Below are positions 22,167 to 59,893 of a stretch of DNA of 64,000 bases, one piece after another. The position numbers and the translations under genes are program-made. The notes below the pieces were generated by a model. It was not told the DNA's origin and searched no databases. It worked only from the letters and a program-made list of their open reading frames with translations. The stretch is from IMG/VR virus record IMGVR_UViG_3300031707_000001, positions 62,001 to 126,000 of that record; one strand, given 5' to 3'. The first letter of the stretch is position 1; the number at the start of each line of letters is the position of its first letter.

Positions 22167-22311
22167 AGAACTTCGAACGCCCAAACAAGAACTGGAACGC
22201 CCTGATGAAGACTGGGACAAGCAGGCTGCTGACAAGTTTGTTCCCGTGATCAAGGTTGAGCCCAAACCAGTCGTACCTGAAACTCCGAAGGGAAGCGTGA
22301 CAAATGGGTGA
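22141..22311 (+). CDS. small hypothetical protein
   Basis: GGAG RBS; MMEKRNVVEE..RTP; overlaps the next start. Confidence 0.5.
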   Translation: MMEKRNVVEELRTPKQELERPDEDWDKQAADKFVPVIKVEPKPVVPETPKGSVTNG

Positions 22312-24295
22312 TTCACAAAGTCTATTTCCTTTTCCATATGAAGCTCCATCGGGTAGTCGCTCAGGGGCAAACAAATACCCCGATCCCTTTTGCGACATTG
22401 CCAGCACGTACGTTCCCCGGGACCTGAACATCATCTTTGAATGGATGGAGTATTTGTATCTGACCATGGGTACCTTCCGCACGGCCGCTCGCCGTGTAGT
22501 CCGCTATTTCCTTACCGAGATAGTTCTGGAAGGAGAATCAGATGCAGAACGTGATAAGTACGAAAAGTTCCTTCACGACGACTTAAACCTCATGAACAGT
22601 CTTGCCAATATTGGCGACGACTACATGGTTTATGGCAACGTATTTGTATCCATTTACTTTCCCTTTGATCGTTGGCTGATCTGTCCGCATTGCGGCATGG
22701 AATACCACTGCAAGACAGTAGACTACAAGTTCAACCTGGCCGACGGCAAGTTCAGCGGTAACTGTATCAAGTGTCACAAGGAACAGGTAGAATTCAAGCG
22801 TGAGGATCGCCGCTCACCCGATCGCAGCCGTGTACGTATCATTCGTTGGAACCCAAAGTTTATGCGTCTGCGTCATCATCCGATCAGCGGCAAGATCGAC
22901 TACTTCCTGGAAATGGAGCCGCTGTTCGTCAACCGCTTGCGTGCCGGCGAGAAGTTCTACATCGACGAGACACCGTGGTCCATGATCGAAGCCTGTCGCA
23001 CCAGCGCCAAGGATGCAGGCCGTGTACTGTTCAAGTTCCGAGACGATGCCATATTCCACTTCCGTGATGCTACCCTGTCTGGTATGGCGCCTACAGGCCC
23101 TCGTGGATGGGCTATTCCGCCTATGATGCCCAACTTCCGCTTGGCCTACTACATTCAATTGTTGCGCCGGTACGATGAAGCTATTGCATTGGACTTCATC
23201 ATGCCGTTCCGTGTGATCTACCCTGATCTGAACAAGGACAAGCAGGGAAGCGATCCGCTATCACTTATGAGCATGGGCAACTTCATTGGCCACATGACTC
23301 AGATGATCGAGAACAAGCGGCGCAACATTACGGATATTCAGATTGCGCCGTTTCCTATTGGCTACCAGATGTTGGGCGGCGAAGCCAAGGAGTTGGCGCC
23401 CAAGGATAGCATTGCCCAGGCTATTGACGAGCTTCTTAATGCCATGGGTTTCCCGGCTGAACTGTACCGGGGCAGCTTGTCCATACAGGCATTTCCAGTT
23501 GCGCTTCGACTGTTTGAAAAGAGCTGGGGCGCACTGGTGGATGGCATGAACGACTTCGTACGGTGGCTGCTTGAGCGTTTGTCCAGACACTTCATGTGGG
23601 GTCCGGTCACCGGGGAACTGCGCAGCGTAACGCTGGCAGATGACATTGAACGTAAGGCATTGGCTTTGCAGGCAGCAGCAGGAATGGATATCTCCAAGGC
23701 CACGGCTTACCGTCCGTTGGGTATCGACTATCTGGAAGAGCAGCGGCGTGTGGTCGAAGAGCAGGAAGAGATCATGAAGCTCCAGCAGGAAGCTATGGAG
23801 CGTCAACAGGCATCGCAGGGAGCGCCTCCAGGCGGTGGTGGCGGTGGACAGCCAGACCAAAGCGGTGGTGGTGGTGCTACTACGCAGCCTGGTGCAACTC
23901 CTGGCGACGTATACGAGCAGGGCAAGGCATTGGCACAGCAGCTATTGCTGCAGACTCCGCCTACAGCCCGTCGTGGCCAGTTGGTACAGATCAAGCATAC
24001 AAACCCAACGCTGCATGCTATCGTGTTGCAGGAGATGAACAACATGCGTCAGCAGTTTGCTTCCCAAGGACAGCAGGCCATGATGCAGCAAGCCGGTGCC
24101 AAGATGGCATCAGCCATAGACAAGCAGCTTGACAAGGTGCCTAGCCCATTCCTGATTGGCATATTGATTAGTGATCAGATATGCGATTATACCCGTAAGG
24201 ATTTGTCGAAGATAGCCATGGACGTAAAATATGGGGTGCCGTATGCCAAGGAAGCATTCCACTTCATATTCGAAAAAGTGAGAGGGCTGACGTGA
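22304..24295 (+). CDS. putative portal protein with Zn-ribbon insertion and Q/G-rich tail
   Basis: 663 aa near the head of the morphogenesis cluster; DYMVYGNVFV and IIRWNP resemble portal motifs; CPHC...CIKC insert. Confidence 0.5.
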   Translation: MGDSQSLFPFPYEAPSGSRSGANKYPDPFCDIASTYVPRDLNIIFEWMEYLYLTMGTFRTAARRVVRYFLTEIVLEGESDAERDKYEKFLHDDLNLMNSLANIGDDYMVYGNVFVSIYFPFDRWLICPHCGMEYHCKTVDYKFNLADGKFSGNCIKCHKEQVEFKREDRRSPDRSRVRIIRWNPKFMRLRHHPISGKIDYFLEMEPLFVNRLRAGEKFYIDETPWSMIEACRTSAKDAGRVLFKFRDDAIFHFRDATLSGMAPTGPRGWAIPPMMPNFRLAYYIQLLRRYDEAIALDFIMPFRVIYPDLNKDKQGSDPLSLMSMGNFIGHMTQMIENKRRNITDIQIAPFPIGYQMLGGEAKELAPKDSIAQAIDELLNAMGFPAELYRGSLSIQAFPVALRLFEKSWGALVDGMNDFVRWLLERLSRHFMWGPVTGELRSVTLADDIERKALALQAAAGMDISKATAYRPLGIDYLEEQRRVVEEQEEIMKLQQEAMERQQASQGAPPGGGGGGQPDQSGGGGATTQPGATPGDVYEQGKALAQQLLLQTPPTARRGQLVQIKHTNPTLHAIVLQEMNNMRQQFASQGQQAMMQQAGAKMASAIDKQLDKVPSPFLIGILISDQICDYTRKDLSKIAMDVKYGVPYAKEAFHFIFEKVRGLT

Positions 24296-30827: not shown

Positions 30828-30829
30828 CT

Positions 30830-31174: not shown

Positions 31175-31197
31175 TTCCGAACACGAAGAGGTGAACC

Positions 31198-32992: not shown

Positions 32993-33001
32993 GGAGGATC
33001 C

Positions 33002-36000
33002 ATGCCTCAGCTTCCGGAAAATCTCCGTGAGTTCGACGATACGGATAAGACCAGGGAACTCATTTACTCCAACGTAATGGATTCGCTGCAGAAGCGTTTT
33101 CCTATTGAGGACAACGAGTATCGTTTGGAACTATCCGGCCTGAAGTATTCTGGTCCTCAGCACTTTTCCCTTGACCAACAGAAACAAGCCCTGATGAAGG
33201 ATCGGCACTTGCACACTCCGATTACAGGGAAGTGGCGCTTGATGGACAAGGCCAACAATGCTGTACTTGGCGAGAAGGAAGACGTTGTAATGAACGTCCC
33301 GTACTACACGCCACGGGGAACATTCATCTTCAATGGCAACGAGTACAGTACAGTCAATCAGTCCCGTTTGAAGCCTGGTGCCTATACTCGTAAGCGTAAG
33401 ACGGGCGAAGTGGAAACGCAATTCAACGTACGGCCTGGGACCGGCCGGCCGTTCCATTTGCGTCTGGAACCAGAAACGGGTATCTTCCGCATCAGCGTTG
33501 AACAATCGAACATTCCTCTCTATACCCTGTTGAATACACTGGGCGTATCTGATAAGGAACTCATGCAGGCATGGGGTCCAGAGATGCTTGAAGCCAATAT
33601 CAAGAAGCAAGATAAGCGGGCCCTTCCAAAGATGTACGAACGTTTTTCGGGGTATAAGTACGATCCCAATGCCCGGGAAGACCAGATGAAGCAGTACATC
33701 AACGAGGCTTTGGCAAAGTTTGAATTGGACCCGGACGTCATGGCTCGTACGCTTGGCATTCGTGACACGAAGAACGTTACGCCACAGGCTCTTATTAGAG
33801 CCACGCAGAAGATGTTGAATGTATCCAAAGGCACAGAGGAGCCAGACGATCGTGATGCTCCAATGTACAGCAACATCTACAGCGTTGAAGATTTACTTCA
33901 GGAGCGCATAGACAAGGATGCCGGAAGACTGGCCAAGACATTACTGTATAAAGCACGTCGTACAAAGAACTTAGACCATGTACGTCGTGGGGCACTAGAT
34001 CCATACATCATGGGACAGAACGGGTTCCTTCTGGCCTCTCGATTGACAATGCCGTTGGAAGAAACCAATCCGCTGCATACGCTGGAGCAATCCGCCCGCA
34101 TTACCAAGTTGGGACAGGGCGGTATAAGCTCTGCCGAATCCATTACTGATGCAGCCCGGGACGTGAACAATGGGCAGTTTGGATTCGTTGACCCGATCAC
34201 TGGACCAGAGCACATCAACGTGGGTATTGACGTGCGTGCCGCTTACAAGAGTTTCAAGGGCAAAGACAAACAGATCTATGGGGAGTTCAGACATCCTGGA
34301 AGCGGAAAGATGTTCTACCTAAGACCTGAAGACGTAGCAGACAAAGCCGTGGCGTTTCCTGGCGAAATGAAGAAGCCAGGAGATACGGCTGTCGTTATGC
34401 AAAACGGGAAAATCAAACGAGTTGCGAAGCCAGAGGTTGACTTTGAGGTTCCATCCTTTGGTCACATGATGTCTTCGCATACGAACATGAATCCTATGCC
34501 AACAGCCGTCCTTCCTGGTCGGCAATTCTATGGCGCAAAATTCTGGAGTCAGTATCTGCCTATGGTAGACGGGGAAACCCCGTTGGTGGATTCTTTAACG
34601 CCAGAAGGCAAACAGACATTCGGTGAATACTACGGACGTAAGGTAGGAGCGCTGAATTCGAAGGTTGCGGGAACTGTAGCGAAAATCACAGATAACAGCA
34701 TTACCGTTGTTGGTGATGATGGTCAAAAACACGTTACTGAATTGGTGAAGGACTTCCCGTTTAACCGACTGACCGGGATCAGTTATTTCCCGGCCGTGAA
34801 GCCTGGAGACAGGGTGAATGTAGGTGATATGGTAGCTCACTCCAACTTCACGGACTCCAAGACGGGAGGGATTAACATGGGCCGCAACCTGAAGACCCTG
34901 ATGATGCCGGCCCGAGGTATGTCTTACGAAGATGCATATGTTATCAGCGAATCGGCCTCAAAGAAAATGACAACGGAGCGACTATATGGATTCGACCAGG
35001 AAAGCAGACAGGGCGTCGATATTGGAAAGAACAAGTTCATTTCAACCTTTGCCCAGAAATTCACCAAGGACCAGGTGTCCAACATTGACGACGAAGGCGT
35101 GGTCAAGCCCGGCACCGTTGTCAGCAAGGGCGATCCTCTCATCCTCGCTGTTGGACCTAAACTCCTTACCTCCGCCGACGCACAACTGGGCAAGCTGCAT
35201 AAAGTGCTGCGAAACGCCTTTACCGACAAATCCGTGATATGGGAATCCAACTATCCTGGTACAGTTACAGATGTGGCTATGACCGGGCATGGTGCCCGTG
35301 TGAACGTAAAGAGCATTCCGCCCGTTCAAGTCGGCGACAAGTTGTCCACACGGTTTGGACTGAAGGGTGTGGTTGGCCGTATTCTACCGGACGATCAGAT
35401 GCCCCGGGATCTGGTAACCAATGACCCCTATGATATGCTGCTCAATCCTATGGGCGTGCTGTCCCGTGTGGCGCCAAATCAGATCATTGAAATGAATCTG
35501 GCCAAGATTGCCAAGAAGACCGGCCAGCCTATTCGTTTACCCCAGGAGCCTCCTCCAGAAGGTTGGGCTGCTTGGGCCAAGAAGCAAATGGATGCAGCTG
35601 GCATCAAGGAAGACAATGACATCTTCGATCCAGTTACGGGAAAGACCATTAAGGGCGTATCAGATGGGTTTGTGTATACAGCGGCATTCCACCACTTGGC
35701 GGAAAAGAAGCTGTCTGCCCGTGGAGAGTCGGGTGCCTATACAATCGACGAACAGCCAGCCAAGGGTGGATTCGAAGGCGCCAAGCGATTCAGCCAGATG
35801 GACGTGAATGCTACGCTGGCACACGGTGCGCCCGAAGTCATTCGGGACGTACAGTTGATTCGTGGTACCAAGAATGAAGAGTTCTGGAAGGCCCTGAAGT
35901 TGGGCCGGCCACTACCCGAACCAACAGTTCCTTTTATCTATGACAAGTTCCTCAATACGCTTCGAGCAGGTGGCGTCAACGTGCAGGAAAAGGGGGACAT

Positions 36001-37393
36001 AGTATCGCTCATGCCTATGACCGATGCTGACGTAGATAGCTTGTCTAAAGGCAAACTGGAGAGCAAGCGTCCATTCGATATGGTAACGCCTGACTTTGAA
36101 CCTATACCTGGTGGGCTGTTCGACATGGGCAAGACAGGTGGCATGAACGGCAATCGCTGGACCCATATCGATCTTGTTGAACCTTTGCCCAACCCTGTGA
36201 TGGAGGAGCCTATTCGCCGAATACTTGGCTTGAAGGTACAGGAACTCAGGGATGTAGTTTCCGGCAAAGCATCCATCAATGGCTTGGCCGGTGGACGTGG
36301 ACTGCAGGAAGCCCTAAAGAATATAGACATTGATGCTGCCATTGAAGAGCACAAGGACAAGGTCAAGTCGCTGCGTGGATCCAACCGTGACAATTCCGTA
36401 AAGGTATTGGGATATTTGTCAGCAGCGAAGAAGCAGGGTGTGCATCCTTCAGCCTGGATGATCACCAAGGTACCCGTACTTCCACCTAAGTTTCGACCCG
36501 TATCACGTATGGGCGACGTTGCATTGATTACCGATCTAAATGAGCTATATGCCTCAGTCATGGAAGTAAACAATAACATCCGTGACATGCGCAAGGTATT
36601 GCCGGAGAGTGAGACAGCAGAACAGAAAGAGTTGCTATATGATGCAGTCTCGGCCGCATTTGGTTTGGGCGATCCCATTACTACAGAAGGTAAGTCCAAG
36701 CGTTTGAAGGGCGCCATTCGTCAGATTATTGGGGCCAGCCCAAAGTCTGGAATGTTCCAATCCCGGGTTATCTCTAAGACTGTAAGCGATGTAGGGCGTG
36801 GCGTAGTAACGCCCGATCCTAATCTGGATATGGACAGCATTGGCATTCCAGAGGATTCAGCGTGGAGTCTCTATAAAGACTTTGTAATGCGCCGACTGGT
36901 ACGTCGGGGTTATCCGTCCGTACGATCGTTGGAACTGATTGAGAAGAAAGATCCAGTTGCCAAGGAAATGTTGGAAGCTGAAATGGCTAGCCGGCCTGTA
37001 TTGGTGGACCGGGCCCCAACGTGGCACAAGTTCAATCTGTTGGCTATGTATCCACACATTTCGGACGGCAATACTATCCGTGTATCGCCACTGGTGACCA
37101 AGGGATTCAACATGGACTTCGACGGCGACCAGGCCAACTTCCACGTTCCCGTGAGCGATAAAGCTGTTGAACAAGCCAAGAACAAAATGCTACCATCACG
37201 CAATTTGTTCAGCTTGACCGATTTGAAATCGGTACGTCACTCTCCATCCATGGAGATGACATTGGGTCTATATTGGCTGACCCGGGAAAAGACAGGTAAG
37301 GCACCGTTGCGGTTTGCTTCGCTTACAGATGCTAAGAAAGCATACCACGAAGGCAAGATTGGGTTGAACGATCCGATCACAATAGGAGCATAA
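33002..37393 (+). CDS. rpoB: phage multisubunit RNA polymerase: beta subunit fused to the N-terminal half of beta' (contains the catalytic DFDGD)
   Basis: Beta motifs GTFIFNG, MSYEDAYVISE, GDKLSTRFGLKGVV, LLNPMGVLSR, HLAEKKLSARG. Beta' motifs WMITKVPVLPPKFRP, DLNELY, VLVDRAPTWHK, FNMDFDGDQANFHVP. Confidence 0.95.
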   Translation: MPQLPENLREFDDTDKTRELIYSNVMDSLQKRFPIEDNEYRLELSGLKYSGPQHFSLDQQKQALMKDRHLHTPITGKWRLMDKANNAVLGEKEDVVMNVPYYTPRGTFIFNGNEYSTVNQSRLKPGAYTRKRKTGEVETQFNVRPGTGRPFHLRLEPETGIFRISVEQSNIPLYTLLNTLGVSDKELMQAWGPEMLEANIKKQDKRALPKMYERFSGYKYDPNAREDQMKQYINEALAKFELDPDVMARTLGIRDTKNVTPQALIRATQKMLNVSKGTEEPDDRDAPMYSNIYSVEDLLQERIDKDAGRLAKTLLYKARRTKNLDHVRRGALDPYIMGQNGFLLASRLTMPLEETNPLHTLEQSARITKLGQGGISSAESITDAARDVNNGQFGFVDPITGPEHINVGIDVRAAYKSFKGKDKQIYGEFRHPGSGKMFYLRPEDVADKAVAFPGEMKKPGDTAVVMQNGKIKRVAKPEVDFEVPSFGHMMSSHTNMNPMPTAVLPGRQFYGAKFWSQYLPMVDGETPLVDSLTPEGKQTFGEYYGRKVGALNSKVAGTVAKITDNSITVVGDDGQKHVTELVKDFPFNRLTGISYFPAVKPGDRVNVGDMVAHSNFTDSKTGGINMGRNLKTLMMPARGMSYEDAYVISESASKKMTTERLYGFDQESRQGVDIGKNKFISTFAQKFTKDQVSNIDDEGVVKPGTVVSKGDPLILAVGPKLLTSADAQLGKLHKVLRNAFTDKSVIWESNYPGTVTDVAMTGHGARVNVKSIPPVQVGDKLSTRFGLKGVVGRILPDDQMPRDLVTNDPYDMLLNPMGVLSRVAPNQIIEMNLAKIAKKTGQPIRLPQEPPPEGWAAWAKKQMDAAGIKEDNDIFDPVTGKTIKGVSDGFVYTAAFHHLAEKKLSARGESGAYTIDEQPAKGGFEGAKRFSQMDVNATLAHGAPEVIRDVQLIRGTKNEEFWKALKLGRPLPEPTVPFIYDKFLNTLRAGGVNVQEKGDIVSLMPMTDADVDSLSKGKLESKRPFDMVTPDFEPIPGGLFDMGKTGGMNGNRWTHIDLVEPLPNPVMEEPIRRILGLKVQELRDVVSGKASINGLAGGRGLQEALKNIDIDAAIEEHKDKVKSLRGSNRDNSVKVLGYLSAAKKQGVHPSAWMITKVPVLPPKFRPVSRMGDVALITDLNELYASVMEVNNNIRDMRKVLPESETAEQKELLYDAVSAAFGLGDPITTEGKSKRLKGAIRQIIGASPKSGMFQSRVISKTVSDVGRGVVTPDPNLDMDSIGIPEDSAWSLYKDFVMRRLVRRGYPSVRSLELIEKKDPVAKEMLEAEMASRPVLVDRAPTWHKFNLLAMYPHISDGNTIRVSPLVTKGFNMDFDGDQANFHVPVSDKAVEQAKNKMLPSRNLFSLTDLKSVRHSPSMEMTLGLYWLTREKTGKAPLRFASLTDAKKAYHEGKIGLNDPITIGA

Positions 37394-37394
37394 C

Positions 37395-37610
37395 ATGACG
37401 GTAAAGCAAGCATACTTGTGTGGGTTTATTGAGAAACTGGCTGCTCCCCTGCTTGGCCTGGGATCATCTGATCCCCGGTTGATAAAGCAGATTGCAGATC
37501 AGCTACGTACGCTTATGCGAACCAACCCGATTGTTCCTCGTCCGGCATTACATCCAGCATACGCACAATTGGAGAACAAATACAGACCCGTCAAACTTTC
37601 GGACAGGTAA
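37395..37610 (+). CDS. small protein with leader-family motif
   Basis: KQAYLCGFIEKLAA. Confidence 0.55.
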   Translation: MTVKQAYLCGFIEKLAAPLLGLGSSDPRLIKQIADQLRTLMRTNPIVPRPALHPAYAQLENKYRPVKLSDR

Positions 37611-38057
37611 GTGAAATTCATAACTACGAACATGTGCACGGCCCGGCAGTACTGCCTGGTGTGCCGGCAGAAAGACGAAGGACGTGAATGGCGGACGCTG
37701 ATAGGTCGCATTTACGAAACGGAAGGTATTGACTTTCCTTGTCCAAATGGAATGCCGTGGATTGAACAAGGACAGACATTCGATCCGTTTGCCGTCGAGG
37801 TAAAGCCCCAGATTCAGTTGCCGATGGACTACGGAAACCTGGGTGACCTGGTTAGAAAACACGCAATCGAACTGAAAAAGCTGTTGCCTGATAGCCGGCT
37901 GAATGTAGCTTTGGATGAAGTCATAGCCTCCGAGAATAGTGGTACCTGTACCGGTTGCGTGAGGGGAAAGATGTTGCGGAAACTAGGTGAATTCGTGCGG
38001 ACGTTGCCTGAAGAAGAGAAGTTGGTTATCAGCAAGATAGTTGCCTATAAACCATAA
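37611..38057 (+). CDS. Cys-rich hypothetical protein
   Basis: CTARQYCLVCR, FPCP, CTGC. Confidence 0.6.
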   Translation: MKFITTNMCTARQYCLVCRQKDEGREWRTLIGRIYETEGIDFPCPNGMPWIEQGQTFDPFAVEVKPQIQLPMDYGNLGDLVRKHAIELKKLLPDSRLNVALDEVIASENSGTCTGCVRGKMLRKLGEFVRTLPEEEKLVISKIVAYKP

Positions 38058-38305
38058 TGAGGCATACAATGTGTAAGTGTGGCGTAAACAAGCTGTGCTT
38101 GGTGCCGATAGATGCCCGGGATTCACATATTAAGCTTGCGTATTGGACACTAAAGGGTATAGATGCCTGCATAGCCGATAAGGTGAATGCATTGAACAGA
38201 GCAGGCAAGCTTACACGGTGTTCCTGTTGTGGGCACGGAAAGGTATCCGGAAGTATAATGCTGCACGACAACACGGTCATCTCAACAGGTATGGCTAAAG
38301 TTTAG
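38057..38305 (+). CDS. small Cys-rich protein
   Basis: CKCG..CLVP; CSCCG. Confidence 0.5.
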   Translation: MRHTMCKCGVNKLCLVPIDARDSHIKLAYWTLKGIDACIADKVNALNRAGKLTRCSCCGHGKVSGSIMLHDNTVISTGMAKV

Positions 38306-38360
38306 CCTTGTAGCTGAATATACGTTTGAAGTATAGTATTGTTGAAAAAGGAGAAGCTGA

Positions 38361-38945
38361 ATGAATAATGTAAATCGTTTGGACCGAACTCTGCTGGAAG
38401 AAGTCAAGAAAGCTTTTGTATCTATGCCTGGCGGTGCTGATCCCTCCATGGGTGCTGGACCTGTAGCTGGTGGCGGAATGCTTACCCAGGCACAAGCTTC
38501 TCCAATGGGCGGAACTCCGCCTATGGATCCTTCCATGATGGGTGGTGCTGGCGGCGGTGGGGCACCTATGGACCCCTCAATGGCCGGCGGTGGAGCACCT
38601 ATGGATCCTTCCATGATGGGTGGCGCTGGTGGACCTCCACCTGATGCTGGTGGTGGAATGCCTCCTCCAGATGCAGGAGCTATGCCGCCTGATGCAGGCG
38701 CAATGCCTCCTCCTCAAAGTCAGATCACAATGTCTGTTCCTGATCTCATTAGTTTGATACAAGCTCTGGGCCCGGCCGGAGCCAAAGCGAAAACACCCAA
38801 AGCCGAAGGCGGAGGCGCTGCCCCAGCCGCTGGTGGCGGTAATACATCAGGACTTGAAGCCAAGATCGATCAGTTGACTCAGATGTTGGCTGGACTTGGC
38901 GGACCTGCTGCTGGTGGATCTGCTGGTGGTGCTCCGGCACAATAA
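38361..38945 (+). CDS. low-complexity Gly/Pro/Met-rich protein
   Basis: Repeated PMDPSM(M/A)GG and MPPDAG units. Confidence 0.65.
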   Translation: MNNVNRLDRTLLEEVKKAFVSMPGGADPSMGAGPVAGGGMLTQAQASPMGGTPPMDPSMMGGAGGGGAPMDPSMAGGGAPMDPSMMGGAGGPPPDAGGGMPPPDAGAMPPDAGAMPPPQSQITMSVPDLISLIQALGPAGAKAKTPKAEGGGAAPAAGGGNTSGLEAKIDQLTQMLAGLGGPAAGGSAGGAPAQ

Positions 38946-39205
38946 TGTCCGAACTAGGAAAAAGCCGAATAGTCGTTCGTGGGTCGAATATTCTCAAGCC
39001 GCCGTTGTTAGAGACTTCGGATGCCAGCATCATAGAATTCTACGACGGCTACAACGAATTGATGGCACTATTGGTGCGGGTGCTTTCAACTAATGCTTGG
39101 GGATTGGTAACCAAGAACGATCCAGACTGGAACGAAACCAAGATCCGTTACGGCTACATGAACGTATCGAAACCCTTTGGTGAAGTTATACGCACAGGAC
39201 TGTGA
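38945..39205 (+). CDS. hypothetical protein
   Basis: TAATG coupling. Confidence 0.55.
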   Translation: MSELGKSRIVVRGSNILKPPLLETSDASIIEFYDGYNELMALLVRVLSTNAWGLVTKNDPDWNETKIRYGYMNVSKPFGEVIRTGL

Positions 39206-39215
39206 GGTAATACTT

Positions 39216-39746
39216 ATGGACAACCCACAATTGGGATTTACCCAAAGGCTCGATGTTGAATTGAAATCTTGTAGTATGCCATCGCACGATCCTCGAAGAG
39301 GTTCAACGGAAGAATTGATTCGTGACATGCATAGGATCCTCACAGGCAACGGAGACTTCAACCACGGTTTGATCTTCAAGGTGGCGTCTGCCAATACCAA
39401 CCTGGGAATGCTACAGGAAAGTGTAAATGGTATGTCAACCAAACTAGATGGTCAGATTACAAAATGTCTGGCGATACAGAATGCCCACGCACTTGAGGCG
39501 GCAGAGAGGACGACAGTAGCCAAGGTAGGAAGAGCCATATGGGAAAACAAGTCCTTGATTTTTGTGATTGTTCTTGGAGCTTTAGTATACTGGGGAACTA
39601 TTACCAAACAGGCAGCGGCGGGCATTGGAGAAGAAAAGCTGGCGAAGTTGGTTGATGCTCGAATAGAGAAAATTCTTCCCGGCGGCACTTCGTTATTGCC
39701 ATCCAAACAGCAACCCAATCCAACCAAACAAATCAAGACACCTTGA
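39216..39746 (+). CDS. coiled-coil protein with one C-proximal TM helix
   Basis: SLIFVIVLGALVYWGTI. GAGGT RBS. Confidence 0.55.
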   Translation: MDNPQLGFTQRLDVELKSCSMPSHDPRRGSTEELIRDMHRILTGNGDFNHGLIFKVASANTNLGMLQESVNGMSTKLDGQITKCLAIQNAHALEAAERTTVAKVGRAIWENKSLIFVIVLGALVYWGTITKQAAAGIGEEKLAKLVDARIEKILPGGTSLLPSKQQPNPTKQIKTP

Positions 39747-41602
39747 TGAAGCCTACCACCCTCGGACAAATCCTAGTCAATGACGCTCTTCCAGAAAAGT
39801 TCAGGAACTATGATCGTGTCCTGACCAAGGCAGAAGCAGATACGTTATTGACACAGATAGCCAAGGAAGTTCCCGATCAGTACAAGCATATTTCGTGGGA
39901 ACTTGTACAATTGGGAAAGGAAGCTGCTTTCACAGAAGGAAGCACACTCAAACTATCCGATCTACAGCCTGTATTCGACAAGACTGATCTACTCAAGCAT
40001 GTTGAACAGCAGGAGAAAAAGATCAAAGCCAGCAAAAGCATGACCGAGGAAGAAAAGCAGCAAGCCCTGGAAACAGTTTATACAGAAGTGCAGAAACTTA
40101 TCGTGGATCAAACATATGATTCGGCTTTAGCCAACAACAATCCGTTTGCCATTCAAGTAAAGTCAAAAGCTCGTGGTAACAAGTCGCAGTTGACGGCACT
40201 ACTGTCAACCCCATCTGTCTATCAGGATGCACAGGAACGCACCATACCGGTATTCATTCGTCGGAGCTATTCCGAAGGACTCGATCCTCACGAATACTGG
40301 GCATCTACATATGGCGCCCGCAAGGCCATTATCGCCACCAAGTTTGCAACCCGGGATGCTGGTGCGTTGGGTAAGCAGCTGGGAGTAGCTGTATCCAACT
40401 TGGTTGTGACTCAAGACGATTGTGGTACACCAGCCGGCATTCCGGTACCTACGGACGATAAAGACAATGTCGGAGCAGTTTTGTCCAGGAATACTGGACG
40501 CTATCCAGCCGGAACTGTAATTACCAAAGAAGTCTTAGCCGATTTGAAGCAGAAGAAAATGGACGAGATTGTTGTGCGTTCACCTATGACCTGTAGTTTG
40601 GCGGAAGGCGTTTGCAAACGGTGTGCCGGCTTACGGGAAGATGGAAACTTCCCACCAATCGGTTATCATCTGGGATTGAATGCTTCATCGGCTTTAGCTG
40701 AACGTATTGCACAGGCATCTCTTAATCAGAAGCATACAGGTGGACAACGTGATCCCAAAGGACACATCGTTTATGCTGGATTCGATGTGATTAACAACCT
40801 GGCCCAGGTTCCAAAGAATTTCCCAAATCGTGCTACAGTTGCAGAACACGAAGGTACAGTCGATAAGATTGAGGAAGCGCCACAGGGTGGTTGGAACGTA
40901 ATCATTGATAACAACGCCCACTACGTTCCGGCCGATCGGCCATTGCTTGTGAAGGAAGGTGACAAAGTAGAGCAAGGCGATACGCTTTCCGAAGGTATTG
41001 TCAATCCCGCTGATGCGGTACGTTTGAAGGGTATAGGAGAAGGCAGACGCTATTTTGCTGAGCGGTTTACCAAAGCTTTCAGGGAATCAGACTTTGAAGT
41101 CAACCGAAGAAACGTTGAAGCTGTAGCCAGGGCATCCATCGATCATGTAAGCGTAGACGATCCAGAAGGCGTCGGTGACTTCCTGCCCGGAGACATCATT
41201 TCGTATAGCGGGGTTGCACATTCTTATCGTCCTCGTGCAGATGCCCAGCAGTTGGATCCAGCCAAAGCCAAAGGTATGTATCTGGAACAGCCCGCATTAC
41301 ACTATACGATTGGTACACGGCTTACAGGTAAAATGGCTGAGGCATTAAAGAAGCACGGAGTGGGTAGTGTAATCGTACATCCACAGCCTGCAGGGTTCAG
41401 TTCTACCATGGTTGGTGTAACCAAGGTTCCGGCGTATACAGACGACTGGATGGCCAGATTGGGCTCTACATACTTGGAATCCCGCCTACTTGAAGATGTT
41501 CAACGTGGTGCAAAATCCAACGTGCACGGGCTAGAACCGTTGCCTGGTATTGCGAAAGGTGTTGAATTCGGTCAGCCGAAAGGTTCAAAATTTACTTACT
41601 AG
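39746..41602 (+). CDS. rpoC: phage RNA polymerase beta' C-terminal half
   Basis: TTLGQILVN, SKARGNKSQ, SYSEGL..EYWASTYGARK (bridge-helix region), VTQDDCGT, VRSPMTC..VCKRC, ASSALAERIAQASLNQKHTGG (trigger-loop region). Confidence 0.93.
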   Translation: MKPTTLGQILVNDALPEKFRNYDRVLTKAEADTLLTQIAKEVPDQYKHISWELVQLGKEAAFTEGSTLKLSDLQPVFDKTDLLKHVEQQEKKIKASKSMTEEEKQQALETVYTEVQKLIVDQTYDSALANNNPFAIQVKSKARGNKSQLTALLSTPSVYQDAQERTIPVFIRRSYSEGLDPHEYWASTYGARKAIIATKFATRDAGALGKQLGVAVSNLVVTQDDCGTPAGIPVPTDDKDNVGAVLSRNTGRYPAGTVITKEVLADLKQKKMDEIVVRSPMTCSLAEGVCKRCAGLREDGNFPPIGYHLGLNASSALAERIAQASLNQKHTGGQRDPKGHIVYAGFDVINNLAQVPKNFPNRATVAEHEGTVDKIEEAPQGGWNVIIDNNAHYVPADRPLLVKEGDKVEQGDTLSEGIVNPADAVRLKGIGEGRRYFAERFTKAFRESDFEVNRRNVEAVARASIDHVSVDDPEGVGDFLPGDIISYSGVAHSYRPRADAQQLDPAKAKGMYLEQPALHYTIGTRLTGKMAEALKKHGVGSVIVHPQPAGFSSTMVGVTKVPAYTDDWMARLGSTYLESRLLEDVQRGAKSNVHGLEPLPGIAKGVEFGQPKGSKFTY

Positions 41603-41679
41603 TGCTTGCAAATGGCTAGAAGCTTATGATATAAATAGAGTTGGCATATAGCTTGGATCAGAACAAGGAGCACCGTAAC

Positions 41680-44025
41680 ATGTCAAAGTTTACTTCGTTG
41701 CTAGCGAATCTGCCCGTCGGACTTACCAAGAACGCCGATATTGAAAGTCCAGATGAGGTACAACTGGAACAAGATTTTGCACGTCTGGCCTATACATTCC
41801 TCAAGGACCGGGCTGCAGGTTTGATTCCATATCTGTTGGGATTTGAAGTCGTCGAACGTGAAGAGGACGGATCGAAGGCCGTAGGAATGTTTGGTTTCAA
41901 GATCGGTAAGGACTATTACTACGTGCCGGCTTTCTTCGTGAACAACCAGATCAAAGGCATGGATCTGCTATTTTCGAAGAGCACTAATATGTTCGTGCCG
42001 CTTCGTGAGCCGTGGATCAACCACATCATCAATCGGCAGACCATTCAGTTGGGCGGACCTATTTCTGAGCCAGAGCCTCTTCTTCGCCGGCAGTTTGAGC
42101 GTCCCCGTTTCGACTTCCTGGCCACACCACCTACGTTTCCTACAGGTATTCCAAAGGCATCAGAAGTCAAGTCAGCTGAAGCTATCCAAGCTGGGTTCAG
42201 TGCTTGGAATGACTTGCAGCAAGCTATTATAGATTCCGTCGAAAAAGATGCCGAGTTTCAGAAGGCGTGGGCAGGTGCTATTGCTCGTCTGGAGGGCACA
42301 CCGCTACCGTTCGAAAAGACGGCCGAAGGAAGCCGGTTGATCGATTGGATTGAAAAGAAGGGTGGAGTAAAAGCCGTCAACGTATTGTTCAAGACGATCA
42401 CAGAGAATCCAGGATTTGCCAAAGCAGCGTTGACGTTCTATCCCAATATTGAATCCTTGTTCGTAACGAAGTTTGCTGCTGAACTGGCGCCAGTGAAACA
42501 AGCTGCGAAGATTACAGTGATCACTGAAAAGACTGATTGGGTAGACGGTAAGGAAAAGAAACGCTTGGTGCGGGACGGGTTTACTATCCACGATACACGG
42601 GAACCTTCGGAGAAGTCCGAGACCTACGAGGTGGATTATGTCAAACGCTTCACAGCTCCAGATAAACCGGGTTTGTACAACGTGCTGCTACGTAACGGTG
42701 GGACGACACAGGCTTGGGTCTTCATGCCCTCTGCAGCGGCAAAGAACAAGTATTTGCTCGTTGTCGATACCGACGCCAAGAACTACTTCATGGCCGAACC
42801 CGGAGCACTATTTGTCCGAGATTCAGACATTATCGAAGGTCCCAATGCTTACTCAAAGGCCATAGATTTGTCTGATATGAAGATTGGGCACAAGTACATT
42901 ATGATCAATGCCCACGGGGAAGCATCTGTGCCAGTTGAAATCCGAAGCATCGTTGCTGAAGACGGTAAACGCATAAAGATGCACGTATACCATTTGAGTG
43001 GACCAAAGTATGAACGCCCAACTTACGGGCACGACTTCTCCACGCTGAAGACACACAGCAATATGGAACTGCAGAACGGGCCTGGCATTTGTGATCGGGA
43101 CTACATCCAGTTGGCTGACTATGAAGGCCGCAACTTGGCACAGGCTGGCCGTGATACAATCATTGTTCCAAGCAATTGGAAAGCATTGGAGATTCAGCCG
43201 GGCAACAAGGACATGGAAAGTTATGAGGCCAAGAACGTACAGGAAGACATGTTCCAGCCTGGCTCACAAACTGACGTAATGGATGCTTTGGCAAAGAACG
43301 CCTTCCACAAGGTTACGGTTGGATCCGATGACAAACTAGAGTATTACATCCAGATGGACGATAGCTTCGTGGACGGTAAGCCCATGAACTATAAGACAGC
43401 CATGGTTCGACTCGTATCCAAGTATGGCCTGGGTGTGGATGATTCAGAAACCATGCTCAAGGAAGCCAAGGATAACTTCAAGTCCAAGCGTCTCGTCAAG
43501 TTTGCACAGAGCCCAATGGTTGGTGTATACATGCCTCCAGAACAGCCTGTGACATATGGAATAGACGAGTTCAGTGGCGTAACAGAACAGCCGGCGCAGA
43601 ATCAGTTTATGCATGGCCAGATGACCGGCGTAGTTCCTCCACAGAACACAATGCGTCCTGGGTTCAACATTGGTGGTGAAACAGCCATGGACCTACAGGC
43701 AGCAGGGTTAGGCCAGGAAGCCGCAGGCGCCGGGCAGAAACAAGTATTCGACCACTCTACAATCGGGGGGCTGTCCAAGGTCTACGATTCCGGTGCAGTG
43801 ATTGATTCCTATGTTCCGGAACTGATGAAGTCCTTGGACCGTTTGGGACGTATCCTGTTCTTGTTCTATTGGAAGAACGAAGAGTTTACAGAACGCTATG
43901 GCAACGAAGACATGGCGGAAATGGAAGATACCATTCGGGGCGTGTTCAAGAGCTTTGGCGACCTGGTACTGCAGCTTCGTGAGAAGACCATTGGTTCCGA
44001 GGAATCAACGAACACGATCATATAA
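41680..44025 (+). CDS. large putative head/core structural protein
   Basis: AAGGAG RBS; KNA/KAS/KQA/KFA motifs; position in the head cluster. Confidence 0.6.
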   Translation: MSKFTSLLANLPVGLTKNADIESPDEVQLEQDFARLAYTFLKDRAAGLIPYLLGFEVVEREEDGSKAVGMFGFKIGKDYYYVPAFFVNNQIKGMDLLFSKSTNMFVPLREPWINHIINRQTIQLGGPISEPEPLLRRQFERPRFDFLATPPTFPTGIPKASEVKSAEAIQAGFSAWNDLQQAIIDSVEKDAEFQKAWAGAIARLEGTPLPFEKTAEGSRLIDWIEKKGGVKAVNVLFKTITENPGFAKAALTFYPNIESLFVTKFAAELAPVKQAAKITVITEKTDWVDGKEKKRLVRDGFTIHDTREPSEKSETYEVDYVKRFTAPDKPGLYNVLLRNGGTTQAWVFMPSAAAKNKYLLVVDTDAKNYFMAEPGALFVRDSDIIEGPNAYSKAIDLSDMKIGHKYIMINAHGEASVPVEIRSIVAEDGKRIKMHVYHLSGPKYERPTYGHDFSTLKTHSNMELQNGPGICDRDYIQLADYEGRNLAQAGRDTIIVPSNWKALEIQPGNKDMESYEAKNVQEDMFQPGSQTDVMDALAKNAFHKVTVGSDDKLEYYIQMDDSFVDGKPMNYKTAMVRLVSKYGLGVDDSETMLKEAKDNFKSKRLVKFAQSPMVGVYMPPEQPVTYGIDEFSGVTEQPAQNQFMHGQMTGVVPPQNTMRPGFNIGGETAMDLQAAGLGQEAAGAGQKQVFDHSTIGGLSKVYDSGAVIDSYVPELMKSLDRLGRILFLFYWKNEEFTERYGNEDMAEMEDTIRGVFKSFGDLVLQLREKTIGSEESTNTII

Positions 44026-58900: not shown

Positions 58901-59893
58901 ACGATTCATGCGGTCTACAACAAAGCGGACAATCCGGTCAACAAGGAATTCTATGCTTTGGTCAGCGATGATCCAAGCGTTCCTGGTACCCAATACACAG
59001 TGGTAACGTTCGTTCCGGCTTCTGGTGAAAGTTCGCCTTACACGAACTGCTTGGCAGACGTGAAGGCTGGTGACAAGGTCCGGATCAACTTTGCTACCGA
59101 TGCATGGGGTACAGCCAGCTATGAGGAATACACGGTGGCTTCAGTTTCGTCCAATACGCAACTGAAGTTGACAACGGGCCTCGCAGCCCCGGTGATCGTG
59201 GCAACAAAGATTGAAGTATGGCATCCATACAGCGTGGCTGAAATGGCTACAGCTGTGGCAGCCATCTCGTCTGGGTTTGCCAACCGCCGCATGTATCACG
59301 TCTTCCCGTCTCGCTTGGGCGCCTTTGGTGTCCAGGAGACAGCGGAATTCGGAGCAGCAGCAATTGCAGGGCTATGCAGTTCAGTGGCTCCGCAGCAGGG
59401 TCTAACGAATATCGAAGTAAACGGATTCGATGATCTGCCGATGGTGTACAGCATGTTCAATCGTGCTCAGCTTAATGAAATGGCTGGAGCAGGTACGTTG
59501 ATTATCATGCAGGACATCGCTGGTGGTACAATCTACGTCCGTCATCAGGTGTCGACGAAGGCCGCAGATGAAGACCTGAATACGACAGAACTGAGCATAA
59601 CAAAGAATCTGGACAGTATCAGTTACTTCTTTGACACTCGGTTGAAGCCGTATATCGGCCGGTTTAACATCACTCAGGCGTTGATCGATGTTATCGAAAC
59701 AGAGATTAACGATGGTTTGATGTACCTCGGCTCGCTCACGAGCGTGGGCTTGCTTGGGCCGCAGATCGTTCTGAACGGCACGTCGATCAGAAGTATTCAA
59801 CAGCATCCGGTGTTGCTGGATCACCTGATCGCATATGTGGACGTGGTACTGCCTTATCCGTTGAACGTGATGGAACTGCATTTGGTTGTATAA
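55955..59893 (+). CDS. contractile tail sheath protein (1312 aa)
   Basis: N-terminal PQVQVFQE; C-terminal PQQGLTN...LN..AGAG.LII.Q...YVRHQVST...ELSITKNLD...YIGRFNI. Confidence 0.8.
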   Translation: MPYVLPQVQVFQEFRVLPSVVVRNLNAFVFGPHYQLFRYEEAAEKALIGLGAYDKSNDTDYSYPNLPSGSTVDQSYVKLYMENVWAQYAAISASSANPLNVVSTAELNKLRAAPVIGACVVGTNGGSPIAGVNPVSGGYLRAGVTAAEDYYMWPYGGWDGGASAWSASKLVMAVDSAAQQGRMKFLTNTGANGTFVVTGNATMPHWDIGPAGIRLQMVAGVDNDIHAPVKVTFGDGAGNELLVELDESKMATLINWAIDLQKPVKIIINLAAGTTSIVWEAVAGSKTLTVNLKPADATTLNGLKSALEGISTVATYFNITLTGSGTGVVSTAVDQVGTDISAATTTLLRDSFRIHVTPNPYVFKTANGVNHSVQFFNRDVQVGDRVRYTVTDGSSVVHTGTTKVVGFEADPALAYLGDPTPKDTNAASQAADDLSAVVASLVPAAGNARTMDNTGAGVIALDGTIQQYPVDLKNGVLSESVTITITKDGLKDVAEATVESASGNYVRTGVKIETGVGGDDGEIYVGQNMVVRFVQGGTDPDAIFQVGDVYTLDPKVKGGYTVIDNRFVVKGGAYAGPIDTTYVVEVVRGGVFNRTVNVIKGLQDPYPAVAVLSASVNWDDWLGGDVDDEYVLVCTSAGDIASAQFHLSSQLGELESGIVFGVAATDIALGDKGLMAQFDVDDTFSVGDYWIIKVNGCRPQVKIFDTAGVDTGGYFTVEAGGVLDLGGYGGTITFEANLNELGGFAPDGGLVVGDVFYVEAVAATDGAIRTLVLADDLPSEAIPGIDSATDMTNTAPDKFGSWLYLVQATTAIESERIQSPPDYNWLADAGGITVYKNLQVQDSSWTNLLGEMMWMNVYSADMYVEYRALLSTYTDTLHFIADIANVPTELGTVSPDNPLSQGVYNALSNSGNRGVWYMGVPSVDLAGFSTVLDRASLTDEVYNFAPLTRDMQILDAVEAHVNDMSSESNKRWRIAFVGTDMPTIHAVYNKADNPVNKEFYALVSDDPSVPGTQYTVVTFVPASGESSPYTNCLADVKAGDKVRINFATDAWGTASYEEYTVASVSSNTQLKLTTGLAAPVIVATKIEVWHPYSVAEMATAVAAISSGFANRRMYHVFPSRLGAFGVQETAEFGAAAIAGLCSSVAPQQGLTNIEVNGFDDLPMVYSMFNRAQLNEMAGAGTLIIMQDIAGGTIYVRHQVSTKAADEDLNTTELSITKNLDSISYFFDTRLKPYIGRFNITQALIDVIETEINDGLMYLGSLTSVGLLGPQIVLNGTSIRSIQQHPVLLDHLIAYVDVVLPYPLNVMELHLVV

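What the first reader, a model, noticed from the sequence alone, without database searches (positions are those of the whole stretch)
33002..41602. Unusual RNA polymerase architecture: beta fused to beta'(N), with beta'(C) encoded five genes downstream
Seen: the 1463-aa ORF runs from beta motifs straight into beta' motifs through FNMDFDGD. The 39746 ORF starts at TTLGQILVN and carries the bridge-helix and trigger-loop regions. No alpha, omega or sigma genes are recognisable in the window. Established: cellular enzymes are beta + beta' (beta' is split in cyanobacteria and archaea; beta-beta' is fully fused in Helicobacter and Wolbachia), and some Caudovirales encode deeply branching multisubunit RNAPs. 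Inference: a minimal two-chain enzyme with both double-psi barrels on one chain. Its location among virion genes suggests it may be packaged.
Basis: partly seen in the sequence, partly recalled or inferred. Interest (0 to 1): 0.7.

Follow-up and report, generated by a model that had tools for sequence, protein, structure and literature searches.

The report
Phage RNA polymerase, fused then split
A 211-kb sediment phage encodes its only RNA polymerase as a beta–beta' fusion protein, with the back half of beta' in a separate gene; this layout is real, is typical of a large and little-described group of big phages, and comes with the phage's own sigma factor.

Summary
ORF 33002-37393 (1463 aa) is a complete beta joined directly to the N-terminal part of beta', ending about 90 residues after the NMDFDGD catalytic loop. 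ORF 39746-41602 (618 aa) is the rest of beta', with the bridge helix and trigger loop. Contigs from several independent metagenome runs show no indels here.

The layout is not peculiar to this genome. At least 521 IMG/VR contigs and 767 protein clusters hold relatives, including cultured Salmonella phage Arash and Vibrio phages D69/D148/D181. Among the closest relatives, about 50 loci carry one fully fused beta-beta' ORF of about 2050 aa. About 25 share the window's split at exactly the same residue.

Trees rooted on bacteria put all split forms in one clade. The fusion is therefore probably ancestral to the group, and the beta' split a later single fission. The genes inserted in the gap vary between relatives and are unlikely to be subunits.

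The genome has one RNAP set and no alpha or omega. It does have a sigma-70-family gene, outside the window, conserved in 10 of 10 relatives and predicted to bind the beta' clamp helices.

Arash virion proteomics detected the homologues of both RNAP chains and of sigma. Packaging is therefore plausible but unproven.

The parts
33002..37393 (+). Gene for the beta-beta'(N) fusion protein (1463 aa)
   Evidence: The ORF is open. It has Pfam Rpb2 and Rpb1 domains and PDB matches to beta and beta'. There are no indels in independent runs, and hundreds of homologues span the junction.
33002..36046 (+). Beta portion (residues ~1-1015). It includes the beta double-psi barrel lysines (GDK...GLKGV, residues ~778-790) and the YEDA motif (~641-645).
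   Evidence: Alignment with Salmonella beta and other bacterial beta sequences; PDB beta chains match residues 22-1014.
36035..36160 (+). Beta/beta' junction. The beta C-terminal tail runs straight into beta' at about residue 15, with no linker. The beta' N-terminal zinc finger (about 32 residues) is missing.
   Evidence: Junction alignment with Salmonella beta C-terminus and beta' N-terminus; zinc-finger gap in all phage members.
36515..36634 (+). Beta' clamp helices (residues 1172-1211), the predicted docking site for the phage sigma-like protein
   Evidence: Alignment to Salmonella beta' 258-312; interface residues in complex prediction.
37109..37129 (+). NMDFDGD catalytic Mg-binding loop of the beta' double-psi barrel (residues 1370-1376)
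   Evidence: Translation. D1372, D1374 and D1376 are invariant in alignments A1 and A3.
37395..39746 (+). Six tightly packed ORFs (71, 148, 82, 194, 86 and 189 aa) inserted at the beta' fission point. They are variable cargo of unknown function.
   Evidence: No Pfam or PHROG hit. Only the 194-aa and 86-aa ORFs have homologues, and only in the closest relatives L007 and L008. No intron or other RNA family is found. The gap content differs in every relative.
39746..41602 (+). Gene for beta'(C) (618 aa). It holds the bridge helix (residues ~180-218, nt 40283-40399), the trigger loop (residues ~304-339, nt 40655-40762) and the second zinc site (DDCGT...TC..GVCKRC).
   Evidence: Pfam Rpb1_5, PDB beta' 579-1116, NCBIfam rpoC positions 549-1069, motif alignment.
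41641..44025 (+). Conserved 794-aa protein directly downstream of beta'C. It is a homologue of Arash gp218, which was detected in virions. Function unknown.
   Evidence: tblastn to L002, L003, L007, L008 and L013; Arash proteome table; no family or fold lead.
22304..24295 (+). Portal protein homologue (context: virion module)
   Evidence: tblastn to Arash gp204 portal, E 2.8e-78.
55955..59893 (+). 1312-aa virion protein with a tail-sheath-like C-terminal part (context: virion module)
   Evidence: Homologue of Arash gp236; phrog_279 tail sheath, E 4.5e-8.

Best explanation
These two genes encode the catalytic core of the phage's only RNA polymerase. It is a bacterial-type two-barrel enzyme. Beta is covalently joined, end to start and without a linker, to a beta' that lacks the N-terminal zinc finger. 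In this subclade that beta' has since been cut into two genes, in the surface linker about 90 residues after the catalytic DFDGD loop. The ancestral form in this phage group was most likely one beta-beta' polypeptide of about 2050 aa. One fission event produced the split, and unrelated genes were later inserted at the break. The two chains are inferred to reassemble non-covalently, as gamma and beta' do in cyanobacteria. They do so without alpha or omega, and the covalent beta-beta' tether is inferred to replace the alpha-dimer assembly platform. Promoter recognition is inferred to come from the phage's own sigma-70-family protein (232 aa, G000:132222-132920, outside the window), docked on the beta' clamp helices. 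The genes sit in the virion module, and the homologues in phage Arash were found in purified virions. The holoenzyme is therefore probably packaged and injected to transcribe early genes independently of the host RNA polymerase. As the only phage RNAP, it may also transcribe later genes. Shown here: the gene architecture, its conservation, its phylogenetic pattern, retention of the catalytic motifs, presence of sigma, and absence of alpha and omega. Inferred: assembly, sigma usage, packaging and timing.
For: Architecture and integrity are shown. Catalytic motifs are kept: beta GDK/KG lysines and YEDA, beta' DFDGD, bridge helix, trigger-loop His and the second zinc site. The junction has no linker and the zinc finger is deleted across the clade. 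The split falls at the same residue in all 8 aligned split members, and fully fused relatives have only 3-4 residues there. Distribution: 767 protein clusters, with the top 120 spanning the junction; at least 521 IMG/VR contigs; about 50 fully fused and about 25 split loci. Trees: the phage clade is supported at 100, and the split forms make one clade at 98 in both FastTree (81 rows) and IQ-TREE LG+C20 (35 rows), with fully fused lineages nearest the bacterial root. The genome has a single RNAP set, as do 5 complete relatives. No alpha or omega was found. Sigma: Pfam Sigma70_r3 scores 36.9 bits against a cut-off of 25.3, NCBIfam sigma models match, and the top Foldseek hits are all sigma-70-family chains at E ~1e-7. 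Sigma is present in 10 of 10 relatives of both architectures. Complex prediction gave ipSAE 0.76 against a best control of 0.00; that mark was reached by 58 of 80 solved complexes and 2 of 110 mismatched pairs. The runs shared at least 31% of contacts and partner pLDDT was at least 70. The interface joins clamp helices 1172-1211 to sigma residues 15-52. Virion link: the Arash homologues gp206, gp216 and sigma gp10 were all detected in virion mass spectrometry, with gp206 giving the most spectra (PMC10585845). Synteny with Arash virion genes is shown.
Against: There are no biochemical or expression data for this phage. The Arash preparation listed 88 'structural' proteins, including nucleotide-metabolism enzymes, and its authors say abundant non-virion proteins may have been carried over. 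The complex prediction may only reflect likeness to solved sigma-beta' complexes, and it used my own shallow alignments. No phage-specific promoter motif was found, and sigma-70-consensus sites are not enriched. The branch that nests the split clade inside the fused grade has only 90-95% SH-like support. The polarity argument therefore rests mainly on outgroup comparison, since bacterial beta' is unsplit. The loci analysed were the 80 best hits to a fused query, which favours fused genes. Unfused phage relatives such as mReC were not in the trees.
Confidence: 0.75

Rival explanations
1. The fusion or the split is an assembly or sequencing artefact (a frameshift or a chimeric join), or one of the genes is a decaying pseudogene.
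For: The genome is a metagenome-assembled virus record.
Against: Contigs from four or five independent runs show no indels across 32900-41700. The same junction occurs in hundreds of homologues, including cultured phages. All split relatives share the same stop and start positions. The catalytic residues are intact.
Confidence: 0.02
2. The split is only apparent. The 2.35-kb gap is removed by RNA splicing (an intron) or bridged by protein trans-splicing (a split intein) to give one beta-beta' chain. Alternatively, the intervening ORFs are obligatory extra subunits.
For: Mobile elements do invade these genes. A group I intron with a homing endonuclease interrupts the fused gene of Vibrio phage D181 (Rfam RF00028, 100.7 bits; annotation). 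Inteins sit in the genes of L007, L088 and L100.
Against: No intron family is found in 32500-42000 or in six other split loci. The gap holds six packed ORFs. The fused chain ends, and beta'C begins, within 1-3 residues of the homologous positions, which leaves no room for split-intein halves. The intervening genes differ in number, strand and sequence between relatives and are absent from fully fused relatives.
Confidence: 0.05
3. The enzyme is a non-virion RNA polymerase made after infection. Host RNA polymerase transcribes the early genes, and the sigma-like protein may redirect the host core rather than serve the phage core.
For: The Arash authors themselves allow that abundant enzymes contaminate the virion preparation. 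Many large phages without their own RNAP use phage sigma factors with host core (PMC7824862). There is only one RNAP set, unlike phiKZ, which has separate virion and non-virion enzymes.
Against: The RNAP genes lie in the same-strand virion module in both this phage and Arash. The sigma homologue gp10 is also in the Arash virion list and sits among virion genes. Sigma co-occurs with the fused RNAP in 10 of 10 genomes and is predicted to bind the phage clamp helices. The rifampicin-pocket residues are changed, as expected for a host-independent enzyme.
Confidence: 0.2

Closest known systems
Salmonella phage Arash (OQ632216) gp206 + gp216, and Vibrio phages D69/D148/D181
   Same: They share the architecture: a 1525-1527-aa beta-beta'(N) protein plus a 606-609-aa beta'(C), split at the same residue. 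They also share the sigma gp10 homologue and the synteny with the portal and virion genes. They fall in the same split clade in the trees.
   Different: Identity is only about 30%. The genes inserted in the gap differ, and in Arash they are mostly on the opposite strand. Arash has a second sigma (gp196) and a virion helicase (gp217) that have no detectable homologue here. The records and the paper label the proteins simply 'beta' and 'beta''. The passages of the paper I retrieved with RNA-polymerase and sigma search terms do not mention the fusion; I did not read the whole paper.
phiKZ / AR9-type jumbo-phage multisubunit RNA polymerases
   Same: They are phage-encoded two-barrel RNAPs without alpha or omega. 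Beta' is split just after its double-psi barrel, and one enzyme is packaged in the virion (PMC7598289). Weak PHROG matches to their subunit families were found.
   Different: In those phages beta is also split, into 2-3 pieces, and nothing is fused. There are two enzyme sets per genome and no recognisable sigma homologue. Here beta is intact and fused to beta', there is one enzyme set, and a clear sigma-70-family gene is present.
mReC phages (Weinheimer & Aylward 2020, PMC7481178)
   Same: They are large uncultured tailed phages whose RNAP is alignable with cellular beta/beta' and branches outside bacteria. They come partly from the same metagenomes (for example 3300017987 and 3300017989).
   Different: Every mReC entry I read in their Supplementary Data 2 (parts 9 and 10) has separate beta and beta' proteins of about 1000/905 or 1360/1005 aa, often two sets per contig. 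None is fused and none has a ~1460/~620 pair. The relationship between the two groups was not tested.
Helicobacter / Wolbachia beta-beta' fusion (NCBIfam NF007172, NF011417)
   Same: The beta C-terminus is joined to the beta' N-terminus in one ORF. These models are the best NCBIfam hits because they cover both halves.
   Different: The scores are far below the equivalog cut-offs (321 against 5372 bits). To my knowledge the cellular fusions keep the zinc finger, alpha and omega. The phage clade is separate from all 16 bacterial sequences in the tree, so the fusion arose independently.
Cyanobacterial / plastid gamma (rpoC1) + beta' (rpoC2) split
   Same: Beta' is divided after the catalytic barrel into two separately encoded chains. 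The fused protein's beta' part matches gamma up to position ~552-556 of ~620.
   Different: The break lies roughly 45-65 residues upstream of the cyanobacterial one. It maps to Salmonella beta' ~553-570, whereas the gamma chain runs about 65 residues further. In cyanobacteria the N-terminal piece is not fused to beta.

Membership tests
Two-barrel (bacterial-type) multisubunit RNA polymerase catalytic core | Beta' double-psi barrel with the DxDxD Mg-binding loop (NADFDGD) | tested here: met
   NMDFDGD lies at residues 1370-1376, and the three Asp are invariant in A1 and A3.
Two-barrel (bacterial-type) multisubunit RNA polymerase catalytic core | Beta double-psi barrel with the two conserved lysines, plus the ED motif | tested here: met
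   GDKLSTRFGLKGV and SYEDA align with Salmonella beta 1058-1080 and 806-820.
Two-barrel (bacterial-type) multisubunit RNA polymerase catalytic core | Bridge helix and trigger loop in beta' | tested here: met
   Both align in beta'C (residues ~180-218 and ~304-339). The trigger-loop His is kept, and the positions of Met and Arg are changed to Leu and Asn.
Cellular bacterial RNA polymerase core (alpha2-beta-beta'-omega) | Alpha dimer assembly platform and omega subunit | tested here: not met
   PF01000, PF01193 and PF01192 give no hit at E<=1 in the whole genome, while the controls hit in 14 of 14 genomes. Use of host alpha or omega cannot be excluded.
Cellular bacterial RNA polymerase core (alpha2-beta-beta'-omega) | Beta' N-terminal zinc finger | tested here: not met
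   A 32-residue gap replaces Salmonella beta' ~67-98 in all phage members.
Sigma-70-dependent holoenzyme | A sigma-70-family factor with regions 2, 3 and 4 that binds the beta' clamp helices | tested here: inconclusive
   The gene is present and conserved, the fold matches sigma chains, and binding is predicted with ipSAE 0.76 against 0.00 for the controls. No binding or promoter data exist.
phiKZ/AR9-type jumbo-phage RNAPs | Beta split into two or three polypeptides | tested here: not met
   Beta is one uninterrupted segment fused to beta'.
phiKZ/AR9-type jumbo-phage RNAPs | Two paralogous enzyme sets (virion and non-virion) | tested here: not met
   One set is found by Pfam, PHROG, phmmer and profile searches. 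Five complete relatives also have one set.
phiKZ/AR9-type jumbo-phage RNAPs | Beta' split after its double-psi barrel | tested here: met
   The split lies 87 residues after DFDGD. I did not align it directly with phiKZ subunits to test whether the position is the same.
phiKZ/AR9-type jumbo-phage RNAPs | Packaging of the enzyme in the virion | not testable with these tools
   Only indirect evidence is available: Arash virion mass spectrometry and the position in the virion module.
mReC RNAP lineage (PMC7481178) | Separate full-length beta and beta' genes that cluster in the mReC clade | tested here: not met
   The gene layout differs from all the mReC entries I read in their table. Clade membership was not tested because no mReC sequence was retrieved.
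Helicobacter/Wolbachia beta-beta' fusion equivalogs | Score above the NCBIfam equivalog cut-off, with the whole of beta' in the same chain | tested here: not met
   The score is 321 bits against a cut-off of 5372. In the window, beta' is truncated at residue 1463, while fully fused relatives exist.
Cyanobacterial gamma/beta' split | Break at the rpoC1/rpoC2 boundary | tested here: inconclusive
   The break is in the same inter-domain region, but the fused chain ends at gamma position ~556 of ~620 and beta'C residue 51 aligns with rpoC2 position ~33-41. The phage break is therefore estimated to lie 45-65 residues upstream.

The most novel reading that the evidence does not exclude
A very large and essentially undescribed clade of 160-225-kb phages carries a self-sufficient, sigma-70-dependent RNA polymerase built from one polypeptide (a beta-beta' fusion of about 2050 aa) or two (as in this window), plus a small sigma. 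It has no alpha, no omega and no beta' zinc finger, and it is delivered with the virion. That would make it the simplest natural bacterial-type holoenzyme known. It would also be a natural experiment showing that tethering beta to beta' can replace the alpha assembly platform, and that beta' can then be re-split without loss of function.
Probability: 0.45. Interest if true: 0.75.

Novelty: new variant of a known kind. Interest (0 to 1): 0.6.

Why it matters
Phage multisubunit RNA polymerases are used to ask what the minimal two-barrel transcription machine looks like and how it assembles without alpha. The characterised examples (phiKZ, AR9) are fragmented into 4-5 pieces and use non-sigma specificity factors.

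This clade goes the other way. It has a single tethered catalytic chain, or two chains, together with a recognisable sigma-70-type factor, and it has cultured members (Arash on Salmonella, D69/D148/D181 on Vibrio). It therefore offers a compact, experimentally tractable holoenzyme for structural and mechanistic work.

It also gives a clean evolutionary series: separate subunits in bacteria, full fusion, then secondary fission with gene insertion. The series can be used to study gene fusion and fission and the part played by mobile introns, inteins and homing endonucleases.

For annotation, the database labels 'beta subunit' and 'hypothetical protein' hide the architecture.

Tried and rejected
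(1) Promoter discovery. No exact 8-10-mer recurs in the 97 intergenic regions. GTTATAA is mildly enriched, with 7 of 14 copies intergenic, but a two-part pattern built from it matches only 2-3 sites. Sigma-70-consensus promoter-like sites are not in excess over 28000-46000 (16 against 19.3±4.3). No promoter is claimed.

(2) Function of neighbours and gap ORFs. Pfam and PHROG give nothing. ESM-Atlas look-ups for the 794-aa and 486-aa proteins return only low-confidence models and scores under 0.8.

(3) mReC membership. The metagenome ids of my loci are absent from their supplements. Their tables list only unfused pairs. I could not fetch mReC sequences for a joint tree.

(4) Exact comparison with the cyanobacterial split. 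A PDB search with the first 100 residues of beta'C gave no gamma hit, so the offset is estimated from profile coordinates only.

(6) Intron or intein bridging of the split was rejected.

(7) A second RNAP set or a second sigma in this genome was not found.

(8) Literature searches for a described phage beta-beta' fusion of this kind found none in the searchable library. This is not proof that none exists.

Full report
**Where the window lies.** The window is positions 62001-126000 of a 210,732-bp IMG/VR virus record with direct terminal repeats, rated complete. Nearly all long ORFs are on the + strand. Logan contigs of at least 13 sediment-metagenome runs hold the region.

**Checking the observation.**
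- ORF 33002-37393 is open for 1463 codons.
- Pfam places Rpb2 domains 2, 3 and 6 at residues 145-922, and Rpb1 domains 1 and 2 at residues 1111-1394, of the same chain.
- Solved bacterial beta chains match residues ~22-1014. Beta' chains and cyanobacterial gamma chains match ~1080-1462.
- ORF 39746-41602 (618 aa) matches beta' 579-1116 of 8i23_D and positions 549-1069 of the rpoC profile. The fused chain stops at position 533 of that profile.
Two details differ. Six ORFs, not five, fill the gap. The ATG of beta'C overlaps the stop of the preceding ORF as ATGA.

**Is it an artefact?** Contigs assembled independently from runs X2, X3, X4 and X5 cover 32900-41700. That includes the beta/beta' junction near 36046, the stop at 37391-37393 and the beta'C start. 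They differ from the window only by substitutions, with no inserted or deleted letters and no alternative joints. These are assembler contigs rather than raw reads, so rare variants would be missed. Together with the conservation described below, a frameshift error is excluded.

**Anatomy of the junction and the split.**
- I aligned the window protein with Salmonella beta and beta' (locus L018). The last residues of beta (…[21 protein letters not shown]) align with …FIYDKFLNTLRAGGVNVQEKGD. The next residues align with beta' from about residue 15. The fusion is therefore end to start, with no linker.
- The 32-residue beta' zinc finger is missing in every phage member.
- The fused chain ends at …NDPITIGA and beta'C starts at MKPTTLGQILVN. 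All eight split relatives aligned end and restart at the same two positions. Fully fused relatives have only 3-4 residues there.
- The break maps to Salmonella beta' ~553-570. That is after the catalytic barrel, and by profile coordinates about 45-65 residues upstream of the cyanobacterial gamma/beta' boundary.
- The catalytic equipment is intact: the beta lysines and ED motif, beta' DFDGD, the bridge helix, the trigger-loop histidine and the second zinc site.
- The rifampicin-pocket positions equivalent to D516, H526 and S531 read E, Q and T. I take this, by inference only, to predict insensitivity to rifampicin.

**How common is it?**
- tblastn against GenBank phages finds four cultured phages whose match covers 98% of the fused protein: Salmonella phage Arash and Vibrio phages D69, D148 and D181. 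For Arash and D69 I found a separate beta'C gene 0.7-4.8 kb downstream.
- A protein search restricted to the junction (residues 880-1300) returns 767 clusters at E≤1e-5. The best 120 all span the junction and carry both Rpb2 and Rpb1 Pfam domains.
- A profile-guided scan of IMG/VR finds at least 521 contigs.
- In the best 80 loci plus the earlier ones, about 50 carry a single ORF of 2020-2190 aa holding all of beta and beta'. About 25 show the window's layout, with gaps of 0.7-5.9 kb.
- Two 'bacterial' hits in GTDB genomes are evidently phage contigs of this group binned into MAGs: a 162-kb contig of a Leptolyngbyaceae MAG and a 204-kb contig of a Bacteroidales MAG.

**Order of events.**
- A FastTree tree used 81 concatenated beta+beta' sequences over 2007 columns, rooted on 16 bacterial rpoB+rpoC pairs. 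An IQ-TREE LG+C20+F+G4 tree used 35 of them.
- Both trees recover the phage group (support 100) and put every split form in one clade (98). Fully fused lineages (L047/L072 and others) lie nearest the root.
- The branch that nests the split clade inside the fused grade has only 90-95% support.
- Because bacterial beta' is unsplit, outgroup comparison alone still favours this order: a beta-beta' fusion at the base of the group, then one later fission of beta'.
- The loci were chosen as best hits to a fused query. Unfused phage RNAPs (mReC, phiKZ-type) were not included, so the origin of the fusion itself remains open.

**What lies in the gap.**
- The six window ORFs have no family hits.
- Only two of them recur, and only in the closest relatives.
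- Arash has different genes there, mostly on the other strand. D69 has two tiny ORFs. Fully fused relatives have nothing.
- No intron family is detected in the window region or in six other split loci. There is no room for split-intein halves.
- These ORFs are therefore cargo inserted at a break point, not conserved subunits.
- Mobile elements do attack these genes. In Vibrio phage D181 the fused gene is interrupted by a group I intron (RF00028, 100.7 bits) followed by a homing-endonuclease gene. Inteins with LAGLIDADG endonucleases sit in L007, L088 and L100, in the last two inside the DFDG|D catalytic loop.
- This fits the published idea that phage RNAP genes are fragmented through intron or endonuclease mobility (cited in PMC7598289). 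It does not show that this particular split arose that way.

**Other subunits.**
- The genome has one RNAP set, as do five complete relatives.
- Alpha and omega profiles find nothing in the whole genome, while they ring in all 14 control genomes.
- A 232-aa ORF at G000:132222-132920 (window coordinate ~70222, outside the window) is a sigma-70-family protein. Its Sigma70_r3 score is above the Pfam cut-off, with weaker region 2 and region 4 signals.
- Several NCBIfam sigma models (FliA/WhiG, SigB/F/G, RpoD C-terminal) match it at E~1e-6. All of these are below their own family cut-offs.
- An AlphaFold model (mean pLDDT 80) has top Foldseek matches that are all sigma-factor models or chains: sigma A, sigma S, sigma B and WhiG among others. 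They align over essentially its whole length at E~1e-7.
- It is the homologue of Arash gp10. It is present in 10 of 10 relatives examined, five split and five fully fused.
- A complex prediction with fused residues 1000-1463 gave ipSAE 0.76 against a best control of 0.00. That mark was reached by 58 of 80 solved complexes and 2 of 110 mismatched pairs. The runs shared at least 31% of contacts, and partner pLDDT was at least 70.
- The predicted interface joins clamp helices 1172-1211 to sigma residues 15-52, which is the canonical sigma region 2 contact. The tool warns that this may only reflect memory of solved holoenzymes. I read it as likeness, not proof.

**Packaging.**
- The RNAP genes lie on the same strand between the portal homologue (22304-24295) and a tail-sheath-like gene (55955-59893).
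- They are flanked by homologues of Arash proteins gp218, gp220, gp222 and gp234-237, all of which appear in the Arash virion proteome table.
- The Arash paper reports gp206 (the fused chain) as the protein with the most spectra in virion preparations. It also lists gp216, sigma gp10 and helicase gp217.
- The same list holds 88 proteins, including nucleotide-metabolism enzymes, and the authors allow for carry-over (PMC10585845).
- Packaging is therefore plausible, at perhaps 60-70%, but not shown.

**Comparison with known systems.**
- The enzyme works like other host-independent phage two-barrel RNAPs.
- It is not a phiKZ/AR9-type enzyme. Beta is intact, there is one set, and sigma is present.
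- It is not an mReC-type pair. All the mReC entries I read in their table have separate beta and beta'.
- It is not a member of the Helicobacter/Wolbachia fusion equivalogs. Its score is far below their cut-off, and it falls in a separate clade from the 16 bacterial sequences sampled, which did not include those fusion genomes.
- The searchable literature describes no phage beta-beta' fusion of this bacterial-like kind. It mentions only the crAss-like fused enzyme, which is too divergent to align.
- I class the finding as a new variant of a known kind. It is clade-wide rather than unique to this window.

Noticed in passing
L189:4958-5238 and 5252-5869 (Vibrio phage D181, OZ196140): The fused beta-beta'(N) gene of D181 is interrupted by a group I intron (Rfam RF00028, 100.7 bits, E 1.4e-26) followed by an annotated homing-endonuclease gene. 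The record annotates the two exons as separate hypothetical proteins. The sister phage D69 has the gene intact.
   Followed up: yes
L088:8884-16665, L100:4914-13532, L007:16563-19520, L008:9974-15370: Relatives carry in-frame insertions in the RNAP genes. In L088 and L100, inteins with LAGLIDADG endonucleases sit inside the catalytic NADFDG|D loop. L007 beta'C has one at the position of window residue ~197. L008 has an unassigned 336-aa insertion at residues 403/404. Many database homologues carry PF14528, PF14890, PF03161 or PF18823.
   Followed up: partly
L091:9001-15042 (IMGVR_UViG_3300025602_000002, 205.5 kb) and L093:11044: The L091 RNAP reading frame contains five in-frame TGA codons, and L093 contains one. 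One aligns with the conserved Trp962 of the window protein and one with Tyr174. This suggests that these relatives read TGA as a sense codon (code 4-like).
   Followed up: partly
L099 (CBDHHL010000046.1, Leptolyngbyaceae MAG, 162.5-kb contig) and L100 (DAOQAF010000001.1, Bacteroidales MAG, 204-kb contig): These contigs, filed under bacterial MAGs, carry fully fused phage-type beta-beta' genes and branch inside the phage clade. They are probably phage genomes binned with, or infecting, those bacteria.
   Followed up: partly
G000:132222-132920 (= L004:1351-2049; window coordinate ~70222-70920, outside the window): This is a sigma-70-family gene of 232 aa, homologous to the virion-associated Arash gp10. 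It sits next to a homologue of the Arash virion protein gp13. It is the only sigma-like gene I could detect in the genome.
   Followed up: yes
window 34025-34120 and 34190-34240 (fused-protein residues ~342-374 and ~398-413): The rifampicin-binding clusters of beta are diverged. The positions of E. coli D516, H526 and S531 read E, Q and T. I take this, by inference, to predict a rifampicin-insensitive enzyme.
   Followed up: no
whole genome G000; within the window near 1898 and 16750: GTTATAA is over-represented in intergenic DNA: 7 of 14 + strand copies lie in the ~6% of the genome that is intergenic. In some copies it is preceded about 14 nt upstream by CTAAAT-like sequence. There are too few sites to call it a promoter.
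   Followed up: partly
window 41641-44025: A 794-aa protein of unknown fold lies directly after beta'C in several relatives examined (L007, L008, L013, D69). In Arash its homologue gp218 lies one gene further on, after helicase gp217, and is abundant in virion mass spectrometry. It might be functionally linked to the RNAP or to its delivery.
   Followed up: partly
window 33782-33826: There is a sub-threshold Rfam match to the histone 3' UTR stem-loop (24.9 bits against a gathering score of 34) inside the beta coding region. It is almost certainly a chance hairpin.
   Followed up: no
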